Below are positions 14,002 through 37,840 of a stretch of DNA of 64,000 nt, one piece after another (the first letter of the stretch is position 1; each line of letters opens with the position of its first letter). The stretch is from the NCBI RefSeq assembly GCF_964204645.1, contig NC_134032.1:15116275-15180274 (forward strand), read 5' to 3'. This DNA comes from Tubulanus polymorphus (taxonomy: Eukaryota; Animalia; Nemertea). Under the pieces are notes generated by a model, which was not told the origin of the DNA, did not search any database, and saw only the letters and a program-made list of their open reading frames with translations. The translations under genes and the position numbers were made by a program.

Positions 14002-16162
14002 AGTAATACCGGTCCGAACTAACTACCACGTTAAATCATCTAGTAATACCGGTCCGAACTAACTACCACGTTCAATCATCTAGTAATACCGGTACGAACT
14101 TACTACCACGTTCAATCATCTAGTAATACCGGTCCGAACTAACTACCACGTTCAATCATCTAGTAATACCGGTACGAACTAACTACCACGTTCAATCATC
14201 TAGTAATACCGGTCCGAACTAACTACCACGTTCAATCATCTAGTAATACCGGTCCGAACTTACTACCACGTTCAATCATCTAGTAATACAGGTCCGAACT
14301 AACTACTACGTTCAATCATCTAGTAATACCGGTACGAACTAACTACCACGTTCAATCATCTAGTAATACCGGTCCGAACTAACTACCACGTTCAATCATC
14401 TAGTAATACCGGTCCGAACTAACTACTACGTTCAATCATCTAGTAATACCGGTCCGAACTAACTACTACGTTCAATCATCTAGTAATACCGGTCCGAACT
14501 AACTACCACATTCAATCATCTAGTAATACCGGTCCGAACTAACTACCACATTCAATCATCTAGTAATACTGGTCCGAACTAACAACTACGTTCAATCATC
14601 TAGTAATACTGGTCCGAACTAACAACTACGTTCAATCATCTAGTAATACCGGTCTGAACTAACTACCACGTTCAATCATCTAGTAATACCGGTCTGAACT
14701 AACTACCACGTTCAATCATCTAGTAATACCGGTCCGAACTAACTACCACGTTCAATCATCTAGTAATACCGGTCTGAACTAACTACCACGTTCAATCATC
14801 TAGTAATACCGGTCCGAACTAACTACCACGTTTAATCATCTAGTAATACCGGTCCGAACTAACTACTACGTTCAATCATCTAGTAATACCGGTCTGAACT
14901 AACTACCACGTTCAATCATCTAGTAATACCGGTCCGAACTAACTACCACGTTTAATCATCTAGTAATACCGGTACGAACTAACTACCACGTTCAATCATC
15001 TAGTAATACCGGTCCGAACTAACTACCACGTTCAATCATCTAGTAATACCGGTCCGAACTAACTACTACGTTCAATCATCTAGTAATACCGGTACGAACT
15101 TACTACCACGTTCAATCATCTAGTAATACCGGTCCGAACTAACTACCACGTTCAATCATCTAGTAATACCGGTCCTAACTTACTACCACGTTTAATCATC
15201 TAGTAATACCGGTCCGAACTAACTACTACGTTCAATCATCTAGTAATACCGGTACGAACTAACTACCACGTTCAATCATCTAGTAATACCGGTCCGAACT
15301 AACTACCACGTTCAATCATCTAGTAATACCGGTCCGAACTAACTACTACGTTCAATCATCTAGTAATACCGGTACGAACTAACTACCACGTTCAATCATC
15401 TAGTAATACCGGTCCGAACTAACTACTACGTTCAATCACTTAGTAATACCGGTCCTAACTTACTACCACGTTTAATCATCTAGTAATACTGGTCCTAACT
15501 TACTACCATGTTCAATCATCTAGTAATACCGGTCCGAACTAACTACCACGTTCAATCATCTAGTAATACCGGTCCTAACTTACTACCACGTTTAATCATC
15601 TAGTAATACCGGTCCGAACTAACTACCACGTTCAATCATCTAGTAATACCGGTACGAACTAACTACCACGTTCAATCATCTAGTAATACCGGTCCGAACT
15701 AACTACTACGTTCAATCATCTAGTAATACCGGTACGAACTAACTACCACGTTCAATCATCTAGTAATACCGGTCCGAACTAACTACCACGTTCAATCATC
15801 TAGTAATACCGGTCCGAACTAACTACCACGTTCAATCATCTAGTAATACCGGTCCGAACTAACTACCACGTTCAATCATCTAGTAATACCGGTCCGAACT
15901 AACTACCACATTCAATCATCTAGTAATACCGGTCCGAACTAACTACTACGTTCAATCATCTAGTAATACCGGTACGAACTTACTACCACGTTCAATCATC
16001 TAGTAATACCGGTACGAACTAACTACCACGTTCAATCATCTAGTAATACCGGTCCGAACTAACTACCACGTTCAATCATCTAGTAATACCGGTCCGAACT
16101 AACTACCACGTTCAATCATCTAGTAATACCGGTCCGAACTAACTACTACGTTCAATCATCTA
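14002..16162. repeat. 40-bp satellite x54
   Basis: Unit TAGTAATACCGGTCCGAACTAACTACCACGTTCAATCATC, no indels seen. Confidence 0.97.
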
Positions 16163-16274
16163 TCAGCCATAGAAATACAACCAGACAACGAGCGGATTAA
16201 ACAAGCAGGCTTCACGAGTGGGCTTAATAAGTGAGCATAACCAGCCGGCTTAATGAACAGCCTTCACGAGCCGG

Positions 16275-16382
16275 GAGAGGGAGAGAGAGAGAGCGAGGGG
16301 GAGAGAGAGAGAGCGAGGGGGAGAGAGAGAGAGAGCGAGGGGGAGAGAGAGAGAGAGCGAGGGAGAGAGAGAGAGCGAGGGG

Positions 16383-16422
<40 letters not shown>
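16275..16422. repeat. (GA)n compound microsatellite
   Basis: Directly visible. Confidence 0.9.
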
Positions 16423-16557
16423 TAGAAAAAGGGAGGAAGAAAAAAGAAAAAGAGAGATGTAGAAAAAGAGAGGGGGACCTGTATGTATATATATACATAT
16501 ATATGTTCTTCAAGATGGTCGCCATAGACACAAAGTGGACGGAGAATTAAAAAGAAC

Positions 16558-17288
16558 CTATATACACTATACAACTAAAACTATATACAGTTGAAACTAT
16601 GTACAGTTAAAACTATATACAGTTAAAACTATATACAACTAAAACTATGTACAATCAAAACTATGTACAACTAAAACTATATACAGTTGAAACTATATAC
16701 AACTAAAACTATATACAACTAAAACTATATACAACTAAAACTATATACAACTAAAACTATATACAACTAAAACTATGTACAGTTGAAACTATATACAACT
16801 AAAACTATGTACAGTTAAAACTACGTACAGTTGAAACTATATACAACTAAAACTATATACAGTTGAAACTATATACAGTGAAAACTATATACAATTAAAA
16901 CTATGTACAGTTGAAACTATATACAACTAAAACTATATACAGTTGAAACTATATACAGTGAAAACTATATACAATTAAAACTATGCACAGTTAAAACTAT
17001 ATACAACTAAAACTATGTACAGTTGAAACTATATACAACTAAAACTATATACAACTAAAACTATATACAGTTGAAACTATATACAACTAAAACTATGTAC
17101 AGTTAAAACTATATACACTTGAAACTATATACAACTAAAACTATATACAACTAAAACTATATACAATTAAAACTATATACAATCAAAACTATATACAATT
17201 AAAACTTTGTACAGTTAAAACTATGTACAATTAAAACTATGTACAAGTAAAACTTTGTACAATTAAAATTATATACAATCAAAACTAT
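16558..17288. repeat. 16-bp satellite, block 2
   Basis: Same unit as 13215-13540. Confidence 0.92.
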
Positions 17289-19212
17289 TAAACGCACCGA
17301 ACTGTGGAACTGAGTCCAGGTGTAATTAAACGCACCGAACTGTGGAACTGAGTCCAGGTGTAATTAAACGCATCGAACTGTGGAACTGGATCCAGGTGTA
17401 ATTAAACGCACCGAACTGTGGAACTGAGTCCAGGTGTAATTAAACGCACCGAACTGTGGAACTGAGTCCAGGTGTAATTAAACGCATCGAACTGTGGAAC
17501 TGGATCCAGGTGTAATTAAACGCACCGAACTGTGGAACTGAGTCCAGGTGTAATTAAACGCATCGAACTGTGGAACTGGATCCAGGTGTAATTAAACGCA
17601 CCGAACTGTGGAACTGAGTCCAGGTGTAATTAAACGCACCGAACTGTGGAACTGAGTCCAGGTGTAATTAAACGCATCGAACTGTGGAACTGAGTCCAGG
17701 TGTAATTAAACGCATCGAACTGTGGAACTGGATCCAGGTGTAATTAAACGCACCGAACTGTGGAACTGAGTCCAGGTGTAATTAAACGCACCGAACTGTG
17801 GAACTGAGTCCAGGTATAATTAAACGCACCGAACTGTGGAACTGAGTCCAGGTCTAATTAAACGCACCGAACTGTGGAACTGAGTCCAGGTGTAATTAAA
17901 CGCACCGAACTGTGGAACTGAGTCCAGGTGTAATTAAACGCATCGAACTGTGGAACTGAGTCCAGGTGTAATTAAACGCATCGAACTGTGGAACTGGATC
18001 CAGGTGTAATTAAACGCACCGAACTGTGGAACTGAGTCCAGGTGTAATTAAACGCACCGAACTGTGGAACTGAGTCCAGGTATAATTAAACGCACCGAAC
18101 TGTGGAACTGAGTCCAGGTCTAATTAAACGCACCGAACTGTGGAACTGAGTCCAGGTGTAATTAAACGCACCGAACTGTGGAACTGAGTCCAGGTGTAAT
18201 TAAACGCACCGAACTGTGGAACTGAGTCCAGGTGTAATTAAACGCATCGATCTGTGGAACTGAGTCCAGGTGTAATTAAACGCACCGAACTGTGGAACTG
18301 AGTCCAGGTATAATTTAACGCACCGAACTGTGGAACTGAGTCCAGGTATAATTAAACGCACTGAACTGTGGAACTGAGTCCAGGTATAATTAAACGCACC
18401 GAACTGTGGAACTGAGTCCAGGTATAATTAAACGCAACGAACTGTGGAACTGAGTCCAGGTGTAATTAAACGCACCGAACTGTGGAACTGAGTCCAGGTA
18501 TAATTAAACGCACCGAACTGTGGAACTGAGTCCAGGTATAATTAAACGCACCGAACTGTGGAACTGAGTCCAGGTATAATTAAACGCACCGAACTGTGGA
18601 ACTGAGTCCAGGTATAATTAAACGCACCGAACTGTGGAACTGAGTCCAGGTATAATTAAACGCACCGAACTGTGGAACTGAGTCCAGGTATAATTAAACG
18701 CACCGAACTGTGGAACTGAGTCCAGGTATAATTAAACGCACCGAATTGTGGAACTGAGTCCAGGTATAATTAAACGCACCGAACTGTGGAACTGAGTCCA
18801 GGTATAATTAAACGCATCGAACTGTGGAACTGAGTCCAGGTATAATTAAACGCACCGAACTGTGGAACTGAGTCCAGGTGTAATTAAACGCACCGAACTG
18901 TGGAACTGAGTCCAGGTATAATTAAACGCACCGAACTGTGGAACTGAGTCCAGGTATAATTAAACGCACCGAACTGTGGAACTGAGTCCAGGTATAATTA
19001 AACGCACCGAACTGTGGAACTGAGTCCAGGTATAATTAAACGCACTGAACTGTGGAACTGAGTCCAGGTATAATTAAACGCACTGAACTGTGGAACTGAG
19101 TCCAGGTATAATTAAACGCACCGAACTGTGGAACTGAGTCCAGGTATAATTAAACGCACCGAACTGTGGAACTGAGTCCACGTATAATTAAACGCACCGA
19201 ACTGTGGAACTG
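17288..19212. repeat. 38-bp satellite x~50 downstream of copy A
   Basis: Unit AACGCACCGAACTGTGGAACTGAGTCCAGGTRTAATTA. Confidence 0.97.
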
Positions 19213-19322
19213 TAGAATGCTGTTGAAGCTGTTGTGTTATTCATTTGGGTATATGTTATAATTGATTTTTTTTCAGTGAAGGCATATTAGGTGCACATGA
19301 ACGTCTCATGCGTTCAAGGCAC

Positions 19323-19715
19323 CTAATATCCCTTCACTGAAAGAATATTTTTCAAATCAGTTAACAAATCCGGAATTGTCCCAGAACGCAGCCGCTCCTC
19401 CCACATTCCATCCGTATGTCGGGCCACCACCTCTACCTCTCGGGCCACTCGATCACTCGCCAGCTTTTTGGCGAGTGAACGAGTGACCGCCCGAGATACG
19501 GATGGAGGAGCAGGAGGAGCAGGACCCGCACCATCCCCAGCCCCACCACCATCCCTCCTCGGCCTCTTCCTATTTATTCTTACCCCTTCCTCCTGATTGC
19601 CTTGATCAGCCGCACCATCCGCAGGGGCTACTCTTGCCTCCCCTCCCTGAGGAGCCACGACCACCGGAACTTTTCTTTTTCGTTTTGTTCTTGTTTTTTT
19701 AGGCGGTGGTCGTGT
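19323..19715 (-). CDS. Terminal coding exon of copy A (130 aa; KRKRK and RKRPRR basic motifs; C-terminal LASDRVAREVEVVARHTDGMWEERLRSG motif)
   Basis: Acceptor ttttttctctttacag at 19716-19717; open frame to TAG (ORF track 19323..19664); a near-identical inverted copy lies at 38909-39301. Confidence 0.8.
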   Translation of the reverse strand, partial: TRPPPKKTRTKRKRKVPVVVAPQGGEARVAPADGAADQGNQEEGVRINRKRPRRDGGGAGDGAGPAPPAPPSVSRAVTRSLAKKLASDRVAREVEVVARHTDGMWEERLRSGTIPDLLTDLKNILSVKGY

Positions 19716-21309
19716 CTGTAAAGAGAAAAAATAAAAAATTTGTTTAGCATAAAATTAAATATCAGTATTAAAAATCGAAATGAGAAAACCAGCGATTCAA
19801 CAAATAAACACCTATACGTAGTTAAGATATTTGGCAATTGGCCGGGGGGGGGGGGAGAGGTGCGGGGAGGTTGGGAGGGAGTTTTAATACTAGGCTGTCA
19901 TGTGATACAAATATCAGAAGTCTACAGCCTTCTTGTAAAAGTCGGCCTCTGCACACGGGCCACGGTGCCGAACTCATTAACTTGTTTTCCAACCGAGTTG
20001 CCCCGATGACAAAATCGGATTATGTTTGTCAGGAAATATTTGAAATGATATTCAGAGACGTGTCATGCACGCATTGAACAATCTTCATCGAGAGGCTAGA
20101 GGAGTATTTCAGCCAATCACCAGTCGGACGGCATGACTCCGCAGATGGCGCTGATCGGCGAAAATATCCGTTATTCGAAAAAAAATTACTCGGATCGAAA
20201 CGGTTTTACATGGAAATCTATAATTCCATTAATAGGTTTTTGTTGAATTTGTTGTTAACTAGACGTATAGGATTATAGAATATTTACTGAACAACTGAAT
20301 TCTGAGTTGAGTGATAACTGTGCAGACTCAAAACATTGAATTCAATTCATCTTTCAAACTCAAATAGAATAAGACAAAACAAATAAAGATTCTTACCTCC
20401 GTCAGATCTCCTTCAGACAGCCGTCCCCGGACTCTTTCCGACCATCTTTTGGCACCCGGGGGCGGCTGTCTGACAGGCCGCTGCTGAGGCGAATTTCCCT
20501 GAGGTTGTGGGGGAGGGGCAGCAGCGGGCGACAAAGGATTCACCGGTGGTGGGATCCTATCTGGTACCAAGTTTCGCGCAAAATCCTCAATGGGCCCCCT
20601 AAAGGGGCACTCCTGTAGAATATCTATGACTGTAAAATAGAAAGAGAGAAATACATTAAACAACGAGTCAAAGGGTTTCAAACGCTGTAAATATGAATAT
20701 TATCCCACCAGGGGGCGCCTGACACTATTAAAATGTAATATCAATGGTTATTGCGTTGATTTAGCCGCAATCGCTGATCAGACTAGGAAAAGATCAGTAA
20801 TTTAAACAGTTTTACTTTGTTGTAAGGTTGCATGATTATTTGTCACATTACAATTTCTTAATGATTCAACGAAAAATGTAGTTTTTCTAACTGCGACGAA
20901 TTGTTTGTCGCTACGAGCAAATTGAGTATCAGAGATTCTAAACTTTGTGGGGCTAATAATTGGTTGAATATTTTGACTAGATTTTGAGATATCAGGTGAC
21001 ACTCTAATAGCTGCCCTTAAGGATATTGTATGAAAATAGTTGAACTACTTACACTCAGGTAGAAACAAGCTGACGAACTCCTCTCGCCGGAACGCACGTC
21101 GAATACGGAATGCTAGTGCTGTAAAAACAATAATACAATTCATTAAAATCACATACATTAATTACAAAACTAGTTTGAATTCTAAAGCAGTTTGTCAGAG
21201 GTGAACTGTGGATCCTGAAACAGAACGCCGCCGCCGGGTCCAGTGCCGGAACAACGATTCTGTTCTTCTAACTCTATCGAGGAGGTTGCCCCAAAACAGA
21301 TCAATCGGG

Positions 21310-21340
<31 letters not shown>

Positions 21341-24300
21341 TCTGAGATCTGTCTGTAATTAGCTGTAAATTTGTCATTTATTTATCCTTCACTCCGTGCA
21401 TATAGTTCACATACAACCCGTGCGGTGGCGCTATTTATGATGTTATCTATGACAATCAACACAAGCACGTGTGCGCGCTAGTACATGGAGCCTATGCATA
21501 ATTGATAAAATAAACATTGATTGTTCACTGTATTCACAGACCTACGGCACTATTATTTTAAAGATTTCGTTAGCAATTCACTACTTTTCTAAAAATCACT
21601 ATTTTTGATTTAATGGTTTAAATTCTCTCTCTTATCATCAGAGCATCAGAAAATTCACTATTTTTCTAAAAATCATTATTTTTGATTTAACGGTTTAAAT
21701 TCTCTCCTCATCATCAGAGCATCAGAAAATTCACTATTTTTCTAAAAATCACTATTTTTGATTTAATGGTTTCAATTCTCTCTCTTTTTATCAGAGCATC
21801 AGAAAATTCACTATTTTTTTAACTAAAAATCACTATTTTTGATTTAACGGTTTAAATTCTCTCCTCATCATCAGAGCATCAGAAAATTCACTATTTTTCT
21901 AAAAATCCCTATTTTTGATTAATCGGTTTAAATTCTCTCCTCATCATCAGAGCATCAGAAAATTCACTATTTTTCTAAAAATCCCTATTTTTGATTAATC
22001 GGTTTAAATTCTCTCCTCATCATCAGAGCATCAGAAAATTCACTATTTTTCTAAAAATCACTATTTTTGATTTAATGGTTTAAATTCTCTCTCTTTTTAT
22101 CAGAGCATCAGAAAATTCACTATTTTTCTAAAAATCGCTATTTTTGATTTATCGGTTTAAATTCTCTCTCTCATCATCAGAGCATCAGAAAATTCACTAT
22201 TTTTTTAAAAATCACTATTTTTGATTCAACGGTTTCAATTCTCTCTCTTTTTATCAGAGCATCAGAAAATTCACTATTTTTCTAAAAATCCCTATTTTTG
22301 ATTAATCGGTTTAAATTCTCTCCTCATCATCAGAGCATCAGAAAATTCACTATTTTTTTTACTAAAAATCATTATTTTTGATTTAACGGTTTAAATTCTC
22401 TCTCTCATCATCAGAGCATCAGAAAATTCACTATTTTTCTAAAAATCCCTATTTTTGATTAATCGGTTTAAATTCTCTCCTCATCATCAGAGCATCAGAA
22501 AATTCACTATTTTTTTTACTAAAAATCATTATTTTTGATTTATCGGTTTAAATTCTGTCTCTTTTCATCAGATCATCAGAAAATTCACTATTTTTTTTTA
22601 CAAAAAATTATTATTTTTGATTTATCGGTTTAAATTCTCTCTCTTTTCATCAGAGCATCAGAAAATTCACTATTTTTCTAAAAATCCCTATTTTTGATTA
22701 ATCGGTTTAAATTCTCTCTCTTTTCATCAGAGCATCAGAAAATTCACTATTTTCTCACTAAAAATCATTATTTTTGATTTATCGGTTTAAATTCTCTCTC
22801 TTTCACAGAGCATCAGAAAATTCACTATTTTTTTACTAAAAATTATTATTTTTGATTTATCGGTTTAAATTCTCTCTCTTATCATCAGAGCATCAGAAAA
22901 TTCACTATTTTTTACTAAAAATCATTATTTTTGATTTATCGGTTTAAATTCTGTCTCTTTTCATCAGAGCATCAGAAAATTGACTATTTTTCTAAAAATC
23001 ATTATTTATGATTAATCGGTTTAAATTCTCTCTCTTTTCATCAGAGCATCAGAAAATTCACTATTTTTTTACTAAAAATTATTATTTTTGATTTATCGGT
23101 TTCAATTCTCTCTCTTTTCATCAGAGCATCAGAAAATTCACTATTTTTTACTAAAAATTATTTTTTTTGATTTATCGGTTTCAATTCTCTCTCTTTTCAT
23201 CAGAGCATCAGAGAATTCACTATTTTTTTACTAAAAATTATTATTTTTGATTTATCGGTTTAAATTCTCTCTCTTTTCATCAGAGCATCAGAAAATTCAC
23301 TATTTTTTTACTAAAAATTATTATTTTTGATTTATCGGTTTAAATTCTCTCTCTTTTCATCAGAGCATCAGAGAATTCACTATTTTTTTACTAAAAATTA
23401 TTAATTTTTGATTTATCGGTTTCAATTCTCTCTCTTTCACAGAGCATCAGAAAATTCACAATTTTTTTACTAAAAATTATTATTTTTGATTTATCGGTTT
23501 CAATTCTCTCTCTTTTCATCATGTTCTTCTAGTTCTTTTAAGGTTGCAGCAAAACAGACCAAATTAATCAGGTTAATTCTGAATGTTTAAAACTCAAGGA
23601 AATTTGGGAATTTAATGGCAGTAAATGGTATTTCGGGCCATCCTATTGTAATTGATATTGCTCCCCTGCCAGTGGTGGTTCACCTGCCAGTTAAAATAAG
23701 TGTCATTTGAAAAAGTTGATAATTATTTAACTGGTCCAAGCAAATACCGGCAAATAAAAATCTAAACAAGAACAAATTGACTAAAATGGACTAAATTTTG
23801 GTCAGTGTCAATTTGTAATGAAATGTCTTATATTAGAACATTCTTTAAAACTCAACAAATGATTTCAGGGATGAGATGAGGCACATTTTTTTCATATTGC
23901 TATTTCTACCTTTTGGCATTTCTTCACACATAACACAAAAATATTTTATGCAAGAATTGCATAGTTAAACATGTTTATGACAAAGTAACAATTATGACCT
24001 GTAATTAGGGTACTATAAAAATCAGTGACTGACACTAACCTACGAACACATGTACATGAACTACAAACATGTACATGTACTCCAAACATGTACCTGTACT
24101 ATGAACTTTCTTGGGTCAAATCAGAGATAGATAAATACATACAGCCTGTGAGGAAAACTATGTAGGAAACACAAGACTTTTCAAAAATCAAAGTTTCCAA
24201 AATTTTCAGATTTTTCAATCAAAAAACTACTTTTCAGATATGTTCATGTTTTTTTTCATATTTTTCCCAGGAATCTCCTCATCGCTGTGATTTTGATAGA

Positions 24301-27300
24301 TCCTGAGCAAGTGTATTAAAGCCAGATACAATCTAGCGTGAAGGCCGCCTCAACAACTACACCGCGACAATTCATTGGTAACGCCAGAAACTTTACCCAA
24401 CTATTAGACATCGGCATCAAAGCCTAAAAATCTCACAATGAAAATGAGATTAAACAGACCAGTGTTACGTGTAAAAGCCGGCCGGCCACAACATCGAAGC
24501 CACTCTTAAGCTAAAGCTAGGGGCACACAGCTATAAAGCTAAAGCTAGGGGCACACGAGCTATAAAGCTAAAGTTAGTGGCACACAGCTATAAAGCTAAA
24601 GCTAGGGGCACACAGCTATAAAGCTTAAGCTAGGGGCACACGAGCTATAAAGCTAAAGCTAGGGGCACATGAGCTATGAAGCTTAAGGTAGGGGCACACA
24701 GCTATAAAGCTAAAGCTAGGGGCACACAGCTATAAAGCTAAAGCTAGGGGCACACGAGCTATAAAGCTAAAGCTAGGGGCACATGAGCTATGAAGCTTAA
24801 GGTAGGGGCACACAGCTATAAAGCTAAAGTTAGTGGCACACAGCTATAAAGCTAAAGCTAGGGGCACATGAGCTATGAAGCTTAAGCTAGGGGCACACAG
24901 CTATAAAGCTAAAGCTAGGGGCACACGAGCTATAAAGCTAAAGCTAGGGGCACATGAGCTATGAAGCTTAAGCTAGGGGCACACGAGCTATAAAGCTAAA
25001 GCTAGGGGCACATGAGCTATAAAGCTAAAGCTAGGGGCACATGAGCTATGAAGCTTAAGGTAGGGGCACACAGCTATAAAGCTAAAGCTAGGGGCACACG
25101 AGCTATAAAGCTAAAGCTAGGGGCACATGAGCTATGAAGCTTAAGGTAGGGGCACACAGCTATAAAGCTAAAGCTAGGGGCACACGAGCTATAAAGCTAA
25201 AGCTAGGGGCACATGAGCTATGAAGCTTAAGGTAGGGGCACACAGCTATAAAGCTAAAGCTAGGGGCACACGAGCTATAAAGCTAAAGCTAGGGGCACAT
25301 GAGCTATGAAGCTTAAGGTAGGGGCACACAGCTATAAAGCTAAAGCTAGGGGCACACGAGCTATAAAGCTAAAGCTAGGGGCACACGAGCTACGATTAAC
25401 AATCTTCAAGTTGTTTGTAGTCCAACTGACTAACTTTACTCACAAATGACGCCGTGCATCAACATGGGATTTTTGACACCGTAGAACATCCTTATCATTT
25501 TTCTTTTAAAGTTTAGTCGATGTTAATCGGATGAGAATTTTAAATTTCATCTAGTTCATAACTTTTAAAGAGGGCAATAATACATTCGACGATGAACCGG
25601 TTTACTCAACTGAAAGACGCTAGCTGCCTACGCGCATGAATAAGTGCCAGTCTTATCGCTAAGCCTCGTATTATAACCAACAATGAAAGGAACCGAGATT
25701 TTCTGACTAAGATTTTAAATTTTTTAACGTTATTACGAAAAATAAACCTACGAAAGTGATGTAATTTCGTTGACAAGAAGTTAAGCAAGAAAGCTAGCGA
25801 CGATGAAAATGAACTCTAATGATTCCATAAAAATTTGATGGATTAAAGCTAAAAATGATATCGTACATTGTCTTTACCAAGCCTGTCATAGAGTTATGAT
25901 AACTGGTCATTTTAACAAAATAAAAATAGATTGAATGCTATGAAATTGAATTTAAAGAATGAACTTACTACGAGCTTGAAGTGCTGGAGGCGTCTCCGGC
26001 GGGAGGAGTGGTCCACTGTCGTCGAAACTCTGTAAATAGTAATAATTTAATAATTAAAATTGGAAAAGCGGCCGCTAACTACAGCAGTAGTTCACAGAAA
26101 TACTGAAATGAACAAGGTCTGAGAAATAAATCATATTAAGATCATCATACAATTTGTCGGGGCATTGGCACCTACACCATGGCGCGTGTTATCTATAACT
26201 GATAGTAAACGCCACCTACACCATGGCGCGTGTTATCTATAACTGATAGTAAATGCCACCTACACCGTGGCGCATGTTATCTATAACTGATAGTAAACGC
26301 CACCTACACCGTGGTGCGTGTTATCTATAACTGATAGTAAACGCCACCTACACCGTGGCACGTGTTATCTATAACTGATAGTAAACGCCACCTACACTGT
26401 GGTGCGTGTTATCTATAACTGATAGTAAACGCCACCTACACCGTGGCACGTGTTATCTATAACTGATAGTGAACGCCACCTACACCGTGGCGCGTGTTAT
26501 CTATAACTGATAGTGAATGCCACCTACACCGTGGCGCGTGTTATCTATAACTGATAGTAAACGCCACCTACACCGTGGCGCGTGTTATCTATAACTGATA
26601 GTAAACGCCACCTACACCGTGGCGCGTGTTATCTATAACTGATAGTAAACGCCACCTACACCGTGGTGCGTGTTATCTATAACTGATAGTGAATGCCACC
26701 TACACCGTGGCGCGTGTTATCTATAACTGATAGTAAACGCCACCTACACTGTGGCGCGTGTTATCTATAACTGATAGTAAACGCCACCTACACCATGGCG
26801 CGTGTTATCTATAACTGATAGTAAACGCCACCTACACCGTGGTGCGTGTTATCTATAACTGATAGTAAACGCCACCTACACCATGGCGCATGTTATCTAT
26901 AACTGATAGTAAACGCCACCTACACCGTGGCGCGTGTTATCTATAACTGATAGTAAACGCCACCTACACCATGGCGCGTGTTATCTATAACTGATAGTAA
27001 ACGCCACCTACACCGTGGCGCGTGTTATCTATAACTGATAGTAAACGCCACCTACACCATGGCGCGTGTTATCTATAACTGATAGTAAACGCCACCTACA
27101 CTGTGGCGCGTGTTATCTATAACTGATAGTAAACGCCACCTACACTGTGGCGCGTGTTATCTATAACTGATAGTGAACGCCACCTACACCATGGCGCGTG
27201 TTATCTATAACTGATAGTAAACGCCACCTACACCGTGGCGCGTGTTATCTATAACTGATAGTAAACGCCACCTACACTGTGGCGCGTGTTATCTATAACT

Positions 27301-30300
27301 GATAGTAAACGCCACCTACACCGTGGCGCGTGATATTGCCGATGCGACTGTACCACACGCACACTACTCCCTGTGCCACAAATAACAAACTAATACAGAT
27401 AATCAGGTTCTAAAATGGATGCTTATTGCGAGCGTTGATAAAATGACTTCAATTAATGATGATGAAACAATCATTCCAGTCGTGCTAATATCAGACACGC
27501 GACGGGTGTGGCGAGACATGTGGTGCGGCGTGTGGCGGGGCATGTGGAGAGGCGTGTGGGGAGGCATGTGGCGCGTGTGGGGAGGCATGTGGCGCAGCGT
27601 GTGGGGACGGGTGTGGGGAGGGGTGTGGCGAGGCGTGTGGCGAGACATGTGGCGCGGCGTGTGGCGCAGCGTTTAGCGAGGCATGTGGGGAGACATGTGG
27701 CGGGGCGTGCGAGGAGGCATGTGGTGAGACATGTGGCGCGGCGTGTGGCGAGACATGTGGCGCAGCGTGTGGCGAGACATGTGGCGCGGCGTGGGGCAAG
27801 ACATGTGGCGAGGCGTTTAGCGAGGCATGTAGGGAGGTATGTGGGGAGACATGTGGCGCGGCGTGTGGCGAGACGTATGGTTCGGCGTGTAGCGAGGCGT
27901 GTGGGGAGGCATGTGGCGAGGCGTGTGGGGAGGTGTGTAGCGAGGCGTGTGGCGGGGCGTGTGGCGAGACATGTGGCGCGGCGTGTGGGGAGGCGTGTAG
28001 CGCAGCGTGTGGGGAGGCGTGTAGCGTGGCATGTGGGGAGGCGTGTGGGGAGGGGTGTGGGGAGGCGTTTAGCGAGGCGTGTGGGGAGGCATGTAGCGTG
28101 GCGTGTGGGGAGGCGTGTAGCGAGGCGTGTGGCGAGGCGTGTGGCGGGGCATGTGGGGAGGCGTGTAGCGCGGCGTGTGGGGAGGCGTGTAGCGTGGCAT
28201 GTGGGGAGGCGTGTGGGGAGGGGTGTGAGGTGGCGTTTAGCGAGGCGTGTGGAGAGGCATGTAGCGTGGCGTGTGGGGAGGCGTGCGGGGAGGCGTGTAG
28301 GGAGGCGCGCGGGGAGGCGTGTGGAGAGGGGTGTAGCGAGGCGTGATGCGCTTATACTCTAAAACATATATCAGTCATCTCTCTCCCTGGGGAGAAGTTA
28401 CACCGAGCTGCTAACAAGCGCTCAGGAGTTGCAGGTACCCATTTACTCCTGGGTGGAGAGAGGTGATGAGGATAAGTGTCTCGCGCGAGGACGCTACGGC
28501 AATGTACGGGGTTCGAATCAACGACCTGGATTCCCAGAGCCGCACCGCTCCACACAGAACACACACAGAAAACATCAAACTAGAATTATAACTTACCGGT
28601 CGTACGGGCGACAGCGGCACGGTAGAGTCAAGGTCAAATGTGGTGTTCTAGAAAAATAAAATGATTTTAAAGATTAAATCATGCATTTTCTCTGCCAGAA
28701 ACTGAATTCATCAAATCTATTAAATATTCCAGTGAGATGAATTGTAAAGAGCCCCCCGAGTATTAGGGTAATCAACAGACCCTCCACACAATTTGATGCA
28801 GTAAACCCGATTAAGGCGGTTTCTCTATTATTTGTCGTCATGCGTTGATATAGAATATTTTGTTTGTTACACAATATCCGGCCGGAACTAATAACCGAAT
28901 GCACTATAGTTCGGTCTTAACGTATTTCACGGTGTCGGCCATTTTGGAAATGGGTTGAAAACTACAGCGACCGGCGGCCGGGCAGCAGACACACTGATAG
29001 GTAACTTGTCGAATGTTCAGATTTTGGCAGCACGCGCTGAAGCTGCTCGTAATTCCCTTAGACACATAAGAGGGAATGGGAGTTTAGGATACTGACTGAT
29101 TGAAATATTTATACTTACGGGCGTCAGCCGCGGCGACTGCCTCCGATGAGGAGGAGCTCTACCCTAGAAACAACAATAATATAAACATAATTAGTCAAAT
29201 GCATTAAGGGTTGAATTTTCAAACATTTCTTATGCGATGTTTTTTATTTCAAAATCAAAATTTTATTTCAAAATTTGATGCACAATTTTTACATGATGTT
29301 AAATGTTCCTTAATAACACATACATTGGTGAAACAATGCGACATTTGGCCACAAGGGTAAAGGAGCATGGAACTTCGCCTTCAGCAATTAAGGAACATTT
29401 AACATCATGTAAAAATTGTGCGTCAAATTTTTCTTTAAAAAACAACTTTTCAATCGTTGATTCTGGAAAAAATGACTTTGAAATCACCATCAAAGAGGCA
29501 TTTTTTATTTCAACTTGTCGGTTTTAATCATTTTAAGCGAACAAAAAGTATTCCGGGATGGAATCCACGAATCAAGGTCCCCAGCGATGTGGCGCCGGTA
29601 TCGGGTCCCCAGCGATATGGCGCCCGTATCGGGTCCCCAGCGATATGGCGCCGGTATTGGGTCCCCAGCGATGTGGCGCCGCTATCGGGTCCCCAGCGAT
29701 GTGGCGCCCGTATCGGGTCCCCAGCGATATGGCGCCCGTATCGGGTCCCCAGCGATATGGCGCCCGTATCGGGTCCCCAGCGATGTGGCGCCCGTATCGG
29801 GTCCCCAGCGATGTGGCGCCCGTATCGGGTCCCCAGCGATGAGGGGCTTTTTCAGTTTCTTCATTTAATTAATTAGATCTCTGTTATTTCAACAAGAATC
29901 GTTTAGAGACCATTTATTTATTTGAGCATCTTTAAATTGTTCAATCAATGGAGCCTTGGATCCAGCCAGATTAAAAACCGACCCCTTACATACTCATCAA
30001 CCTAACAGGTGCAACAAACAGTAAAGGTTTTCAATATAAGGGATCGTTCAATTCTCCGTGCCTTGTTCTTAACCCTCCTACTCCTGTACGCACACGCATT
30101 ACAATAATGATTTTTACTTATATAAATGGTGGCTTTTATTGTTTAGAGCCGACCCTGATATGAGTATAAACAGTAACGAGGGGACTAGAGATACCGTACC
30201 CACTTGGGAAGTGGTCGCAAATACTCAACAATCTGACAATCTTTAAATTCAACGCCCCCTGGTGAATAATAAACCAAAGATATTGAAAATCAATAAAACC

Positions 30301-32342
30301 ATAGAAAAACTTTGCAATTGAATGCGATAACTATATATACAGAGACATCCAAACATAAATGGAAATGAATATTAAGATGATAGCTGCATCAAAAATGACT
30401 GATCCAAAAACCTGTTCGATGATGTTTCAAAAAACTATAGAAACAATGGAACCATTTGAATAGCGGTAACGAGCTGTCAGGGGACGAGGGTAACGAGCTG
30501 TCAAGGGTAACGAGCTGTCAGGGGACGAGTGTAACGAGCTGTCAGGGGACGAGGGTAACGAGCTGTCAGGGGACGAGGGTAACGAGCTGTCAGGGAACGA
30601 GGGTAATGAGCTGTCAGGGAATGAGGGTAACGAGCTGTCAGGGGACGAGGGTAACGAGCTGTCAGGGGACAAGGGTAACGAGCTGTCAGGGGACGAGGGT
30701 AACAGCTGTCAGGGGACGGCAGTAATGAGCTGTCACGGGACGAGGGTAATGAGCTGTCAGGGAACGAGGGTAACAGCTGTCAGGGGACGAGGGTAAAAGC
30801 TGTCAGGGGACGGCAGTAATGAGCTGTCACGGGACGAGGGTAACAGCTGTCAGGGGACGGCAGTAATGAGCTGTCACGGGATTTCCTAAGAAAACTAGAT
30901 TTTATCTACAGACTGACGAAAAGTGAACGCAATAGCGCAATAACTTAAGTCCCAAGTGGGATAAAAAAAGCATGAATTAGTTTGGACTTAAATGCAAGAT
31001 GTTTGTTTAATCACTTACAGCTGACGGTCCTGGTATTGGTGACAAATTCTGTAAAGATAAAATAAAACAAAATATTAGATGGATATTCATGAATACATGT
31101 ATCACTGATTCTTCAGTAGTTTTATAACCAATCTAAAAATTCAACACCAGTCTAAACTCATTTTAGTTCTATAACCAATCTAACAACTTTAGACCAGTCT
31201 AAGCTCATTTTAGTTCTATAACCAATCTAACAACTTAAGACCAGTCTAAATTCATTTTAGTTCTATAACCAATCTAACAACTTAAGACCAGTCTGAACTC
31301 ATTTTAGTTCTATAGCCAATCTAAAAATTCAACACCAGTCAAAACTCATTGTAGTTCTATAACCAATCTAACAACTTAAGACCAGTCTAAACACATTTTA
31401 GTTCTATAAACAGAGAGAACACATGTAGTTGTTACTTACAGGTGTCGGCGGCGGCGGTGGCGCCACTTGTCCCGGCGTCGGAGGTACGATCTGTAAGTAC
31501 AATCAAAAATACACAATTTAAAACAAGAACTGATTTTAGTTTTAAGGTTGGAGGGAAGTCGATCAGTTTTGGGGTTGGAGGGAAGTCTATCAGTTTTGGG
31601 GTTGGAGGGAAGTCTATCAGTTTTGGGGTTGGAGGGAAGTCTATCAGTTTTGGGGTTGGAGGGAAGTCTATCAGTTTTGGGGTTGGAGGGAAGTCTATCA
31701 GTTTTTTTGTTGATTGTATTTATTTCTGGAGTAGCAGCAGAAACATGGTTCAAAGTTCCCCCTCCCCCCAGCTGCTTCAGACTCACTACATGTGTTTATT
31801 GTAGTTATAACTTACCGACTCGCCGAGTTGTTGTTGCTGCTGTTGCTGCTGCTGTTGATGCTGGAAAAGAAAAAAAAAATATTCATGCAATGACAATTGA
31901 GCTTTAGTGATAATTATGATAGATATAGATATAGGAAGGACACAGCTGTGAAATTACACTTTAAAATACGATAAATGTATCGCCATGGGAACGACCAATA
32001 ATCGGTGCCAAATATCGTTATTTAAATGTTACCATGGTTACTATAAATAAAAACCAGTTCACGATAGCATTTTTCACAGAACAAATTTGCTCAATCGACC
32101 TCAAATTCAATTCAAATACCGTTTTATTCAAAACGTTACCAAATTCGTTCATGTTTATCATTGGTCTCATTAACGGTGTTATTTAACAGAACACTTTGAC
32201 TCTACCTGTTTTTACACTTGTTTTCTAACATAGTATGAATAAATTAGCATGAAAGCAGTAAATTTGAACTTACCGAAGGACTTGACGTAAGCGGGCCGGG
32301 CCGCCCGTGCCCACGAACCGATTTTTTGTTGGTTTTCGGCAT
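19323..32342 (-). CDS. 10-exon gene for an uncharacterised 347-aa Pro/Ser-rich basic protein (source-like copy A of the local gene family)
   Basis: Coding exons read on the minus strand: 32342-32274 (MPKTNKKSVRGHGRPGPLTSSPS), 31860-31816 (HQ10LGES), 31490-31440 (IVPPTPGQVAPPPPPTP), 31048-31019 (NLSPIPGPSA), 29163-29119 (GRAPPHRRQSPRLTP), 28647-28597 (NTTFDLDSTVPLSPVRP), 26029-25969 (SFDDSGPLLPPETPPALQAR, ends phase 1), 21118-21053 (TLAFRIRRAFRREEFVSLFLPE, phase 1-1), 20629-20397 (FIDILQECPF...EGDLTE, phase 1-0), 19715-19323 (TRPPPKKTRTKRKRK...LKNILSVKGY*). All donors are GTAAG, acceptors are pyrimidine-rich and end in YAG, and the exons sum to 1044 nt with no internal stop. An AG lies just before the ATG, so an upstream non-coding exon is likely. 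Confidence 0.8.
20397..20629 (-). CDS. Exon 9 of copy A (233 nt, Pro-rich)
   Basis: GC-rich open frame (ORF track 20328..20681) bounded by a ttttacag acceptor and a GAG|gtaaga donor; phases fit both neighbouring exons. Confidence 0.75.
21575..23521. repeat. ~76-bp AT-rich satellite x~25 (intron 7)
   Basis: ATCAGAGCATCAGAAAATTCACTATTTTT recurs every ~75-79 bp. Confidence 0.93.
24508..25392. repeat. 28/29-bp minisatellite x~31 (intron 7)
   Basis: Unit AGCTATAAAGCTAAAGCTAGGGGCACAC(G). Confidence 0.93.
26168..27332. repeat. 44-bp minisatellite x~26 (intron 6)
   Basis: Unit GCCACCTACACCGTGGCGCGTGTTATCTATAACTGATAGTAAAC. Confidence 0.95.
27500..28345. repeat. G-rich degenerate 12-bp repeat (intron 6)
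   Basis: Unit approximately GCGTGTGGSGAG. Confidence 0.9.
28349..28552 (-). mobile_element. tRNA-derived SINE (5' end truncated or degenerate)
   Basis: The minus strand has a B-box-like GATTCGAACCC followed by CTCTCTCCACCCAGGAGTAAATGGGTACC, a central-domain motif typical of widespread invertebrate SINE2 families. Confidence 0.7.
29310..29515 (+). mobile_element. Penelope-like retroelement fragment (GIY-YIG endonuclease, C-terminal half)
   Basis: The translation YIGETMRHLATRVKEH..SAIKEHL..C....FSIVD.....ITIKEAFFI matches the PLE GIY-YIG pattern YIGxTxRxLxxRxxEH...EA(L/F)xI; no reverse transcriptase is present. Confidence 0.85.
29576..29841. repeat. 28-bp GC-rich minisatellite x~9.5 (intron 4)
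   Basis: Unit GGGTCCCCAGCGATRTGGCGCCCGTATC. Confidence 0.92.
30466..30880. repeat. 24-bp minisatellite (intron 4)
   Basis: Unit GTAACGAGCTGTCAGGGGACGAGG. Confidence 0.9.
31118..31408. repeat. 47-bp minisatellite x~6 (intron 3)
   Basis: Unit TTCTATAACCAATCTAACAACTTAAGACCAGTCTAAACTCATTTTAG. Confidence 0.88.
31546..31704. repeat. 27-bp minisatellite x~6 (intron 2)
   Basis: Unit GGTTGGAGGGAAGTCTATCAGTTTTGG. Confidence 0.9.
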
Positions 32343-33027
32343 AATCTAGAAAAATAAATAAATAAAACAATTAAATCATATGAAAATATCAGACATGAAT
32401 CATGCACAGTTTAGTCAATTATTCCTGTATATGGTTCACTCAGTAGAGTACTGAACATAAAGTAACTAATAAACAGGTGAATCTAGTAACAATCGCTCAA
32501 CAGAATGTAGAGTACAAGTCAGACACCTCGGCTACTAATGGATTTCTCTTCAAAAATGTAAATTAAGCTATTTCAATCACATGGTTGACCATTTCCCGAC
32601 TTAAGCTCCCACTAACTGACAATCGGTTCCACATGTCGACTATCTGTAACCCATGATTTATCTGATTATATCAAAAATTGATGCTACTTAACCTTGGCCT
32701 GACTCAAAAATGGCGTTGGAACAGCAGCAGCGAAACCACGCCAATAATTTAGTAAATGACCTTTTTTTCTGTTCTATACTGTTTTTGAAAATTGAAGTAA
32801 ATTCACTGCAGCATAGAACCTGTCAAAAATCAGCAATTTGCTGCGACAATCAAAAATTGCTTCAGTGGCGTTGGAAGTGTAGAGACTGCAGCGGCGATAA
32901 TTAACTGAATCACGTTTGTTTTTCTTTGAATACCACATTTTTGAAGAAATTAAGTAAATTTGCCGCAGCAATATTTAGAACCTGTCCAAAATCGGCGTTT
33001 GGCTGCGGCAATAAAAAATTGCTTCCA

Positions 33028-35599: not shown

Positions 35600-36147
35600 T
35601 CAATGCTGATTTCATCCCAGTATCAATGCTGATTTCATCCCAGTATCAATGCTGATTTCATCCCAGTATCAATGCTGATTTCATCCCAGTCTCAATGCTG
35701 ATTTCATCCCAGTATCAATGCTGATTTCATCCCAGTCTCAATGCTGATTTCATCCCAGTATCAATGCTGATTTCATCCCAGTATCAATGCTGATTTCATC
35801 CCAGTATCAATGCTGATTTCATCCCAGTATCAATGCTGATTTCATCCCAGTATCAATGCTGATTTCATCCCAGTATCAATGCTGATTTCATCCCAGTATC
35901 AATGCTGATTTCATCCCAGTATCAATGCTGATTTAATCCCAGTCTCAATGCTGATTTAATCCAAGTATCAATGCTGATTTAATCCCAGTATCAATGCTGA
36001 TTTCATCCCAGTATCAATGCTGATTTCATCCCAGTATCAATGCTGATTTCATCCCAGTATCAATGCTGATTTAATCCCAGTCTCAATGCTGATTTAATCC
36101 CAGTATCAATGCTGATTTAATCCCAGTATCAATGCTGATTTCATCCC
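35600..36147. repeat. 23-bp minisatellite x~24
   Basis: Unit TCAATGCTGATTTCATCCCAGTA. Confidence 0.95.
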
Positions 36148-37109
36148 TGTGTCACTAAAATTAGAATAATGAAATCACAGATGATGAAAATATACAATTA
36201 AGAGAAGAACAGACATTATCTGTAATAAATGAAAGATGTGACCCGAGCTAGTAACAGCAACGGTTAGCAGACCAGTGGAGAATAAGACACACAGGGGTAC
36301 CACTAAATCAGGGAAAATAGGCCTCAGTCAGTGAGAGCCGTGCCTCTTTGTTTTCAGTTCTGCAGAGATTTCAGCTTTTGGAAATATGTCAAGAACTATG
36401 TATGAGTGGACTGACGGATCGTCTCTCGATCTGCATGCATAAACCACCTACATCCAGTCCGAAAGGAAAAAGGACAAATGACAACAAGGCAAAGTGGTGC
36501 AAAAAATACAGACTGCAGTAGTGAGGTGGTTATGGTGCGGGGGGGGGGGGTTGTTTGCAATCATACAGATCCTGGATCGATCGCCCAAAGAGCTCTCGAT
36601 CTGCGTGCTTAAAATACCTCTCAATCCAGTCCAAATGACAAGTAGTGAAGTAGTGCAGAAAATAATATGACCTTAGCAACAAGAAGGTGGTTATGGTGTT
36701 GGGGGGGGGGTTGGGGGTAAAGTTGCTCATGCTGCAGCTACCAACAAACTTCTCAAATCGGAAATGACTTTTAAAACGCAGGAACAAATAATCAGTATGG
36801 ATGTACAATCTGTAGATGGACTGTCCTTAGAGATCCACATATCCAATAATAGTATGGAATGAATATTCTCTATTTCTACACAGTTCACCAGTGCAGTCGT
36901 CATTCAGGAATTTTATATTTTCTCCACTTGAAAAAAAAGTGTTAAGCTAGAGATGAAGCTGCCAGTCACGAAGCAACTCTTAACTGAAAGCACAATGTGG
37001 GACTGCTCCTGCCAACATTCTGAGCAGTCCTCAGCGCGTCTCCTGGAGCTCCACCATCGTGATGACCAACCACCAAACTAAAACAACCAGGTACATCAGA
37101 TGATCTGGT

Positions 37110-37840
37110 GGGGCTATACGGGCAATAACACAGCAGGACCTCGCCCGGGGCTATACGGGCAATAACACAGCAGGACCTCGCCCCGGGGCTATACGGGCAA
37201 TAACACAGCAGGACCTCGCCCAGGGCTATACGGGCAATAACACAGCAGGACCTCGCCCCGGGGCTATACGGGCAATAACACAGCAGGACCTCGCCCCGGG
37301 GCTATACGGGCAATAACACAGCAGGACCTCGCCCCGGGGCTAAACGGGCAATAACACAGCAGGACCTCGCCCCGGGGCTATACCGGCAATAACACAGCAG
37401 GACCTCGCCCCGGGGCTATACGGGCAATAACACAGCAGGACCTCGCCCCGGGGCTATACGGGCAATAACACAGCAGGACCTCGCCCCGGGGCTATACGGG
37501 AAATAACACAGCAGGACCTCGCCCCGGGGCTATACGGGCAATAACACAGCAGGACCTCACCCCGGGGCTATACGGGCAATAACACAGCAGGACCTCGCGC
37601 CGGGGGTATACGGGCAATAACACAGCAGGATCTCGCCCCGGGGGTATACGGGCAATAACACAGCAGGACCTCGCCCCGGGGGTATACAGGCAATAACACA
37701 GCAGGATCTCGCCCCGGGGCTATACGGGCAATAACACAGCAGGACCTCGCCCCGGGGGTATACGGGCAATAACACAGCAGGACCTCGCCCCGGGGCTATA
37801 CGGGCAATAACACAGCAGGACCTCGCCCCGGGGCTATACG
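37110..37840. repeat. 38-bp GC-rich minisatellite x~19
   Basis: Unit GGGCTATACGGGCAATAACACAGCAGGACCTCGCCCCG. Confidence 0.95.

What the first reader, a model, noticed from the sequence alone, without database searches (positions are those of the whole stretch)
19323..32342. Hidden micro-exon gene for an orphan Pro/Ser-rich basic protein, mostly invisible to the ORF track
Seen: eight exons of 30-69 nt plus two larger ones join through nine canonical introns with compatible phases (0,0,0,0,0,0,1,1,0) into a stop-free 347-aa frame, which is unlikely by chance. The N-terminal third is a string of phase-0 cassettes rich in SP/TP, followed by a short hydrophobic/charged segment (LAFRIRRAFRREEFVSLFLPEFIDILQECPF), basic NLS-like runs (KRKRK, RKRPRR), RxSxR/VTRS/RLRSG motifs and a C-terminal segment that may be helical. 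Inference: a largely disordered, phospho-regulated nuclear or chromatin-associated protein. I recognise no family.
Basis: partly seen in the sequence, partly recalled or inferred. Interest (0 to 1): 0.8.

Follow-up and report, generated by a model that had tools for sequence, protein, structure and literature searches.

The report
Multi-copy micro-exon gene with RNA hairpins
The ten-exon gene is real by every sequence test available: it is one intact copy of a ribbon-worm family with at least 34 copies that encodes an unrecognised, very basic, mostly floppy protein, and its message carries long conserved fold-back stems inside the coding sequence, though no RNA data were available to show that it is expressed.

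Summary
Observation confirmed. On the minus strand, ten exons (69, 45, 51, 30, 45, 51, 61, 66, 233 and 390 nt) join through nine GT-AG introns, phases 0,0,0,0,0,0,1,1,0, into 347 codons without a stop (P 17%, R 11%, pI about 11.6). All eight GTAAGT hexamers on that strand of the 13-kb span are the donors of exons 1-8.

It is not a chance chain. Diverged paralogs on three other stretches keep the same exons, splice sites and phases, all length differences are multiples of three, and pooled dN/dS is 0.26-0.33.

It is also not a lone gene. Exon 10 has 34 intact copies near the ends of contigs C3, C6 and C8, and a second subfamily (about 45-50% identical, 9 copies) has the same layout. The scan met this family before on other DNA (s1-518627, s1-518599).

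No relative turned up in Pfam, PDB or two large protein searches. These were run exon by exon only; the joined protein was not searched.

New here: three long stem-loops lie in exons 9 and 10 and across the stop codon. Both subfamilies keep them through synonymous codon choice and sense-strand G·U pairs. The nuclear, phospho-regulated role remains inference.

The parts
32274..32342 (-). Exon 1 (69 nt, ATG at 32342, donor GTAAGT, phase 0). Its first 12 codons are hypervariable between near-identical copies.
31816..31860 (-). Exon 2 (45 nt, poly-Gln cassette, phase 0-0). It is 84 or 93 nt in the C6 and C3 copies.
31440..31490 (-). Exon 3 (51 nt, Pro/Thr-rich, phase 0-0). It is 39 or 48 nt in paralogs.
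31019..31048 (-). Exon 4 (30 nt, phase 0-0). It is 27 nt in paralogs and lies in a conserved island with its splice sites.
29119..29163 (-). Exon 5 (45 nt, phase 0-0). An R-R-x-S-P-R-L-like motif is shared with subfamily B.
28597..28647 (-). Exon 6 (51 nt, phase 0-0). It is present in C8-type copies and in the tandem units (45 nt) and absent from C6/C3-type copies.
25969..26029 (-). Exon 7 (61 nt, phase 0 to 1). It is 70, 76, 82 or 85 nt in paralogs, always 1 mod 3.
21053..21118 (-). Exon 8 (66 nt, phase 1 to 1, amphipathic basic/hydrophobic segment). Subfamily B has the same length and phase.
20397..20629 (-). Exon 9 (233 nt, phase 1 to 0, donor GTAAGA). It has a Pro-rich middle and a conserved basic end.
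19326..19715 (-). Exon 10 (390 nt, followed by the stop at 19325-19323). It holds two basic clusters, a Gly/Ala/Pro linker and a conserved C-terminal stretch of about 60 residues.
20413..20473 (-). Stem-loop H0 inside exon 9 (18-nt arms). It is weaker than the others but is also present in subfamily B.
19395..19520 (-). Stem-loop H1 inside the exon-10 coding sequence (about 46 pairs, -81 kcal/mol), with its loop at 19463-19468.
19265..19348 (-). Stem-loop H2 across the stop codon (30-nt arms, -47.5 kcal/mol). Conservation among copies ends just 3' of it.

Best explanation
This is an intact, spliced, protein-coding copy of a multi-copy ribbon-worm gene family. The family has at least 34 intact copies and many fragments, all within about 0.4-3 Mb of contig ends.

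Protein. The 347-residue product is very basic and proline-rich. Its front third is built from short in-frame cassette exons that tolerate gain, loss and length change. Next comes a short amphipathic segment, then two basic clusters, then a small helical C-terminal module. I infer that it is a mostly disordered nuclear protein that binds nucleic acid or chromatin through its charge and pairs or docks through the C-terminal module.

RNA. The mRNA carries three long stem-loops: in exon 9, in exon 10 and across the stop codon. Both subfamilies keep them, so I infer that output of the family is controlled after transcription by a pathway that reads double-stranded RNA (dicing, A-to-I editing, or Staufen-type decay or localisation).

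Shown: exon structure, conservation of splice sites and frame, purifying selection on exons 8-10, copy number, and hairpin conservation at the RNA level. Inferred: expression, nuclear location, phospho-regulation, and what the hairpins do.
For: Gene model:
- Ten exons, canonical splice sites, 347 codons, no stop.
- All 8 minus-strand GTAAGT are donors, against 1 on the plus strand.

Paralogs:
- Copies on C6, C3 and C8 keep e1-e5 and e7-e10 with AG/GTAAG sites and the same phases.
- Exon lengths differ only by multiples of three: e1 69/63, e3 51/39/48, e4 30/27, e5 45/39/42, e6 51/45, e7 61/70/76/82/85, e9 233/230, e10 390/384.
- Only the exons and their edges align between the window gene and the C6/C3 copies.

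Selection:
- Pooled dN/dS is 0.26-0.33.
- For e8-e10, pN is 0.074 against pS 0.262, Fisher p = 6e-10.

Family:
- 34 full-length stop-free e10 copies; about 38 e9 copies; e8 likewise.
- Subfamily B (9 copies, 45-51% identical) keeps the 66-nt e8 in the same phase, a 236-nt e9, e10 and an e5-like cassette.

Protein:
- Composition and pI.
- AF2 of e10: residues 1-70 disordered, four helices at 72-128 with low confidence.

Hairpins:
- Dinucleotide-shuffle z-scores: H1 -9.3 (A) and -8.6 (B); H2 -12.4 (A) and -11.1 (B).
- With the peptide held fixed and synonymous codons redrawn, H1 has z = -6.1 in both subfamilies (0 of 150 as stable). A control stretch of e10 gives -1.0 and -0.3.
- The two subfamilies share the apex codons, and the inner stem has 3 compensatory pairs.
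- In subfamily B the stems hold 20 G·U pairs on the sense strand against 3 on the antisense. Sense energies are -90 and -70 kcal/mol against -65 and -44 antisense.
- Among 12 subfamily-A copies, third codon positions vary at 3 of 42 inside H1 against 20 of 80 elsewhere in e10, p = 0.016.
Against: - No transcript data of any kind were available, so splicing and expression are unproven.
- No copy of this family appeared in either large protein search. Either it is unannotated or the libraries lack this proteome.
- The N-terminal micro-exons e4 and e5 show pN about equal to pS. Their peptide sequence may matter little.
- Part of e10's conservation is due to RNA structure, so it overstates the protein constraint.
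- The AF2 model is low-confidence (mean pLDDT 54).
- In subfamily A the stems are almost perfectly Watson-Crick, so A alone cannot tell RNA structure from a DNA palindrome.
- Some neighbouring compact copies are broken, which shows that the family also decays.
Confidence: 0.65

Rival explanations
1. The stems matter as DNA palindromes, not as RNA. They would form hairpins or cruciforms that break and start recombination or gene conversion, keeping the 3' end of all copies alike and driving rearrangement of the arrays.
For: - In the six 2.69-kb tandem units of this window, the e10 copy is broken exactly in the H1 loop. The 5' arm ends e10' and the 3' arm lies about 560 bp upstream.
- e10 is the most homogeneous exon between chromosomes: pS 0.04-0.17, against 0.36-0.8 for e8 and e9.
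- Subfamily-A stems are nearly perfect on both strands.
Against: - In subfamily B the stems depend on G·U pairs that exist only on the sense strand (20 against 3), and the antisense fold is 25 kcal/mol weaker. A DNA palindrome would not show this bias.
- The two readings are not exclusive.
Confidence: 0.2
2. The gene is cargo of a large mobile element or of a selfishly amplifying segment. Its copy number would then reflect transposition rather than host function.
For: - Nine subfamily-B copies that are 97-99% identical lie on three contigs inside blocks over 10 kb long that are 96-99% identical, introns included.
- Subfamily A is on three contigs.
Against: - Subfamily A sits in regular tandem arrays with a period of about 33 kb on C6. 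That fits segmental amplification better than transposition.
- The window has no ORF of 110 aa or more other than translated repeats and these exons.
- A ten-exon gene of 13-17 kb is atypical cargo.
Confidence: 0.1
3. The family is transcriptionally dead or decaying DNA. On this reading the intact frame of this copy is a young relic.
For: - No RNA data were available.
- The family is absent from the protein libraries searched.
- Neighbouring compact copies carry a stop (unit 4, e1), a frameshift (unit 7, e1) and a truncated e10' (unit 1).
- Many e10 fragments elsewhere carry stops.
Against: - dN/dS is 0.26-0.33 between copies with dS about 0.46-0.49.
- Splice sites and phases are kept across subfamilies that differ at half their residues.
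- There are 34 intact e10 copies.
Confidence: 0.1
4. The chain of micro-exons is a chance construction from minisatellite-rich DNA.
For: - The introns hold at least ten minisatellite arrays whose translations are themselves Ser/Pro/Thr-rich.
- Short AG...GT pieces are easy to chain.
Against: - None of the ten exons lies in a tandem array.
- All 8 GTAAGT on the strand are the donors.
- Nine of the ten exons recur with their splice sites in paralogs whose introns do not align.
Confidence: 0.02

Closest known systems
Schistosome micro-exon genes (MEGs; bioRxiv 10.1101/2023.06.21.545858)
   Same: Both have runs of very short, frame-symmetric exons separated by long introns. Both are multi-copy, fast-evolving, lineage-restricted families in which cassettes can be added or dropped without breaking the frame.
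   Different: MEG products are secreted, with a signal peptide, and most of the coding sequence lies in micro-exons. Here exon 1 is polar and basic with no hydrophobic leader. Only about 40% of the coding sequence (418 of 1041 nt, e1-e8) is in small exons, the product looks nuclear, and the last exons carry conserved RNA stems.
Dox-family drivers and their hairpin-RNA suppressors in Drosophila simulans (bioRxiv 10.1101/2021.08.05.454923; PMC10292708)
   Same: Both are young, amplified families encoding small basic nuclear-type proteins, with inverted and rearranged partial copies next to intact genes and with double-stranded RNA as a recurring theme.
   Different: Dox proteins derive from protamine or HMG-box genes, and no such domain is detected here. 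The suppressor hairpins of flies are separate long inverted-repeat loci, not stems inside the coding sequence. No small-RNA, sex-linkage or germline data exist here. This is an analogy, not membership.
Other multi-copy micro-exon genes noted by this scan in the same genome (s1-518627, s1-518599, s1-492671, s1-492695)
   Same: s1-518627 and s1-518599 describe a micro-exon gene family of about 30-34 copies with small exons that vary inside near-identical introns. The copy number and the pattern match what I measured, so it is very likely this same family on another stretch.
   Different: I could not compare sequences with those reports. They do not mention the coding-sequence hairpins. s1-492671 and s1-492695 describe genes of about 40 exons and are a different family.

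Membership tests
Schistosome-type micro-exon genes (MEG) | Most of the coding sequence lies in frame-symmetric exons of at most about 81 nt | tested here: not met
   e1-e6 are symmetric phase-0 exons of 30-69 nt, but e1-e8 together make only 418 of 1041 coding nt; e9 and e10 hold 60%.
Schistosome-type micro-exon genes (MEG) | N-terminal signal peptide and a secreted product | tested here: not met
   The 23 residues of exon 1 are polar and basic with no hydrophobic run, in all copies read. This was judged by eye; no predictor was run.
Protamine-like / HMG-box sperm nuclear basic proteins (Dox-type) | A recognisable HMG-box, histone H1 or protamine domain | tested here: not met
   Pfam scans of e1, e7, e8, e9 and e10 and of subfamily-B exons gave only sub-threshold chance hits. 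PDB sequences gave nothing below E = 0.07.
Known microRNA or other RNA families (Rfam 15) | A score at or above the family's gathering threshold | tested here: not met
   There was no match at gathering score in the whole window. At E up to 1 the three hairpins draw only generic pre-miRNA-shaped matches of 22-30 bits, against thresholds of 52-211.
Transposon-borne gene | A transposase, integrase or reverse transcriptase, plus terminal repeats bounding the repeated block | tested here: inconclusive
   No such ORF lies in the 64-kb window. The block ends of the dispersed subfamily-B copies could not be fetched.
Expressed protein-coding gene | Spliced transcripts across the predicted junctions | not testable with these tools

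The most novel reading that the evidence does not exclude
The family could be a self-policing amplified gene system of the driver/suppressor kind. On this reading the conserved double-stranded stems in the mRNA, together with the inverted, rearranged copy arrays beside intact genes, feed a small-RNA or RNA-editing pathway that acts on all copies. The exon-restricted variation between otherwise identical copies would then reflect pressure on the mature RNA sequence rather than on the protein alone. This would be a genomic-conflict system of the Drosophila Dox/hairpin-RNA type in a ribbon worm, with the hairpins built into the coding sequence.
Probability: 0.1. Interest if true: 0.85.

Novelty: new variant of a known kind. 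Interest (0 to 1): 0.58.

Why it matters
ORF lists miss this gene, and no copy of it appeared in the protein libraries I could search, so standard annotation may be missing a large family. The family combines three unusual features:
- cassette micro-exons that vary between copies whose introns are almost identical;
- massive amplification near chromosome ends;
- long RNA stems kept inside a coding sequence by synonymous codon choice in two subfamilies that differ at half their residues.

The last feature is directly testable, and it shows that nucleotide conservation in a coding exon cannot always be read as protein constraint. If the stems are substrates for dicing or editing, the family would be a compact model for RNA-level control of amplified genes outside the usual model animals.

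Tried and rejected
Homology, all blank or below threshold:
- Pfam on the exons of both subfamilies. The DUF6508, DUF5423 and PARP-repeat hits are far below their cut-offs, and I treat them as chance.
- PDB sequences.
- phmmer of e10 against 1.84 billion representatives: 0 hits.
- Word-index search of e10: none scored. It only sees proteins of 72-228 residues, so it is blind to a full-length product of about 350.
- ESM Atlas features.
- Rfam.

Structure. AF2 on e10 with six paralogs gave mean pLDDT 54. I did not run a fold search on so weak a model.

Other dead ends:
- tblastn of all minus-strand open frames against subfamily-B loci found only e9 and e10. The small exons had to be found by splice-site scanning. 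I did not find exon 1 of subfamily B.
- A MAFFT DNA alignment of the H1 region across subfamilies was unusable, and one of its rows used wrong coordinates. I replaced it with a codon-based mapping.
- The bacterial-type promoter/terminator scan upstream of e1 is not informative for an animal.
- Literature searches on ribbon-worm genomes gave nothing on this family.

Rejected ideas:
- That the SP/TP micro-exons were picked out of minisatellites. None overlaps an array.
- A destruction box or a PP1-docking motif at the end of e9. These are not conserved in subfamily B.
Full report
**What is there**

The window is G000:C8:15116275-15180274 of a ribbon-worm genome. Earlier notes of the scan name the species Tubulanus polymorphus; I did not verify that. 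It is not human DNA.

Reading the sequence and scanning for AG...GT pieces let me rebuild exactly ten exons:

| Exon | Coordinates (minus strand) |
|---|---|
| e1 | 32342-32274 |
| e2 | 31860-31816 |
| e3 | 31490-31440 |
| e4 | 31048-31019 |
| e5 | 29163-29119 |
| e6 | 28647-28597 |
| e7 | 26029-25969 |
| e8 | 21118-21053 |
| e9 | 20629-20397 |
| e10 | 19715-19326 (stop at 19325-19323) |

- Every acceptor is AG. The donors are GTAAGT eight times and GTAAGA once.
- The phases are 0,0,0,0,0,0,1,1,0.
- The total is 1041 nt, or 347 codons, with no stop. I checked frame and composition exon by exon and counted the two split codons separately.
All searches below are on single exons, by reference.
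- The product has 17% Pro and 11% Arg, a pI of about 11.6 and a net charge of about +20.

**Is it more than chance?**

Compatible phases alone prove little in 13 kb. Three other results do.

- **Splice donors.** The minus strand of the span holds exactly eight GTAAGT hexamers, and all eight are the donors of e1-e8. The plus strand has one, and mononucleotide shuffles average 3.7.
- **Repeats.** None of the exons lies in any of the minisatellite arrays that fill the introns, although several of those arrays translate into Ser/Pro/Thr-rich strings.
- **Paralogs.** The window gene aligns to copies on C6 and C3 only in short islands. These islands are e1, e4, e5, e7, e8, e9 and e10 with their splice sites. 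Splice-site scanning of those copies also finds e2 and e3 in the same order.

Exon lengths differ only by multiples of three:

| Exon | Lengths seen (nt) |
|---|---|
| e1 | 69/63 |
| e2 | 45/84/93 |
| e3 | 51/39/48 |
| e4 | 30/27 |
| e5 | 45/39/42 |
| e6 | 51/45 |
| e7 | 61/70/76/82/85 |
| e9 | 233/230 |
| e10 | 390/384 |

Part of this variation (e2, e7) sits in trinucleotide runs, which slip in threes anyway, so it counts for less. e6 is missing from the C6/C3 type.

**Selection**

Nei-Gojobori counts, made per exon and then pooled, give dN/dS of 0.32 (window against C6), 0.26 (window against C3) and 0.33 (C6 against C3).

- For e8-e10, pN is 0.074 against pS 0.262, Fisher p = 6e-10.
- The small exons e4 and e5 show pN about equal to pS. 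Their frame and splice sites are kept, but their residues are hardly constrained.

**It is a family, not a lone gene**

- e10 has 34 full-length, stop-free copies at 89-100% identity on C3 (0.42-1.33 Mb), C6 (0.65-1.75 Mb, mostly about 33 kb apart) and C8 (15.1-16.3 Mb of 16.7 Mb). There are also dozens of fragments with stops.
- e9 and e8 follow the same map. An e1-like piece lies 13-17 kb upstream of e10 in the C6 and C3 copies.
- A second subfamily has nine copies at 97-99% identity on C11, C9 and C8:13.96 Mb. It shares only 45-51% of residues with the first and sits in duplicated blocks over 10 kb long.
- Subfamily B keeps a 66-nt e8 in the same phase, a 236-nt e9, a 465-nt e10 and an e5-like cassette with the same R-R-x-S-P-R-L core.
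- All copies lie within about 3 Mb of a contig end.

The scan has met a micro-exon family of about 30-34 copies with 'hypervariable small exons inside identical introns' on other DNA (s1-518627, s1-518599). Copy number and behaviour match, so I take it to be this family, though I could not compare sequences.

**Exon-restricted variation, reproduced here**

- Between two C6 copies, the small exons are 93.3% identical and their 150-nt flanks 99.2% (Fisher p = 8e-10).
- Between the window gene and its close C8 paralog, e1 is 82.6% identical and its flanks about 98% (p = 3e-6).
- Among the six 2.69-kb tandem units at 40166-56300, variable columns pile up in e1, e5, e6 and the start of e10', and are nearly absent elsewhere.
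- Eight of the twelve e1 differences between the window gene and its C8 paralog are the state found in the C6-type copies.
- Some variable unit exons carry a stop or a frameshift.

I therefore favour patchwork exchange with diverged copies over new mutation or protein-level diversifying selection. The exons are the only stretches that all arrays still share, so ectopic conversion can only land there. This is an inference from a few copies.

**What the protein looks like**

- No family is recognised by Pfam, PDB sequences, phmmer of e10 against 1.84 billion representatives (0 hits), the word search (blind to proteins over 228 residues) or the ESM Atlas.
- AF2 on e10 with six paralogs is weak (mean pLDDT 54). 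It gives residues 1-70 as disordered and four helices at 72-128.
- Features conserved between the subfamilies are the amphipathic e8, the basic end of e9, a basic cluster at the start of e10 and the C-terminal stretch of about 60 residues.

Nuclear location and regulation at the roughly ten S/T-P sites are reasonable guesses and nothing more.

**New: conserved RNA stems in the coding sequence**

An inverted-repeat scan and folding show three stem-loops.

| Stem-loop | Subfamily A (this window) | Subfamily B, homologous place (L013) |
|---|---|---|
| H1, in e10 | 19395-19520, -81 kcal/mol, z -9.3 | 8880-9005, -90 kcal/mol, z -8.6 |
| H2, across the stop codon | 19265-19348, -47.5 kcal/mol, z -12.4 | 9071-9172, -72 kcal/mol, z -11.1 |
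| H0, in e9 | 20413-20473, z -3.7 | z -2.3 |

The subfamily-B stems fold as strongly although their sequences differ. Four tests bear on whether the structure itself is selected.

- **Synonymous recoding.** Holding the peptide fixed and redrawing synonymous codons, native H1 is 6 sd more stable than recodings in both subfamilies (0 of 150 as stable). The first 126 nt of e10 show nothing (z -1.0 and -0.3).
- **Shared position.** The two H1 stems share their apex codons, and the inner stem has three compensatory pairs.
- **Frozen synonymous sites.** Among 12 subfamily-A copies, variable sites are 13% before H1, 2.4% inside it, 5.9% in H2 and 51% just downstream. Third codon positions vary at 3 of 42 inside H1 against 20 of 80 elsewhere (p = 0.016).
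- **Strand bias.** In subfamily B the stems use 20 G·U pairs on the sense strand against 3 on the antisense, and the antisense folds are about 25 kcal/mol weaker.

These results point to selection on the sense RNA, not merely on a DNA palindrome. Rfam gives only sub-threshold, generic pre-miRNA-shaped matches. So part of e10's nucleotide conservation is RNA constraint.

The stems may also matter as DNA. In the tandem units the e10 copy is broken exactly in the H1 loop.

**Verdict**

- **Observation:** confirmed.
- **Interpretation:** partly supported. The gene is real and unrecognised, but it is one of many copies, and its function remains inferred.
- **Best reading:** an intact member of an amplified, fast-evolving family. 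It encodes a basic, mostly disordered, probably nuclear protein, and its mRNA carries conserved double-stranded stems that most likely mediate post-transcriptional control.

I cannot show expression, or say which RNA pathway reads the stems. I also cannot say whether relatives exist in other animals, because no other eukaryote genome was searchable here.

Noticed in passing
window 40166-56682 (+), with a partial copy at 38446-39301 (+): Six and a half tandem units of 2.69 kb hold a compacted version of the gene: e1, e5, the 3' arm of hairpin H1, e6, then e10 cut in the H1 loop. All keep GTAAGT donors. Variation among units is concentrated in the exons. Unit 4 e1 has a stop, unit 7 e1 a frameshift, and unit 1 e10' is cut to 47 codons.
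   Followed up: partly
window 20026-20164: A block inside intron 9 is conserved at about 75% with the C6 and C3 copies, although the rest of the intron does not align. On the plus strand it reads like a CCAAT box followed by a GCCAT-type motif, so it may be an antisense or internal promoter.
   Followed up: no
window 32343-32440: A TATA-like motif about 85-90 nt upstream of the ATG is conserved in the C6 and C3 copies. A pyrimidine tract ending in TAG sits 3 nt before the ATG in all copies. That tract could be an acceptor for an upstream non-coding exon or for a spliced leader.
   Followed up: no
window 19653-19717: A 14-nt inverted repeat pairs the acceptor of e10 with coding sequence 37 nt downstream, which could mask the 3' splice site.
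   Followed up: no
window 15000-19212, 21575-23521, 24508-25392, 26169-28345, 29576-29841, 30504-31705, 35600-36154, 37110-37840, 39414-39962: There is an exceptional load of minisatellites (units of 16-157 nt, up to 50 copies) in the introns and flanks of the gene. The same 38-nt array follows e10 in both the gene and its inverted partial copy.
   Followed up: partly
G000 C6:0.65-1.75 Mb, C3:0.42-1.33 Mb: In the large arrays, each intact plus-strand copy is accompanied by minus-strand e10 fragments with stops and by short tandem runs of e1-like pieces. The pairing of an intact gene with inverted degenerate copies therefore recurs outside this window.
   Followed up: no
L025+L026 (C8:15638000-15654000): One close paralog has an e8 of the same length and phase but an almost entirely different peptide (pN 0.56), while its e9 and e10 are 87-97% identical. 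This looks like a swapped or very fast-evolving cassette.
   Followed up: no
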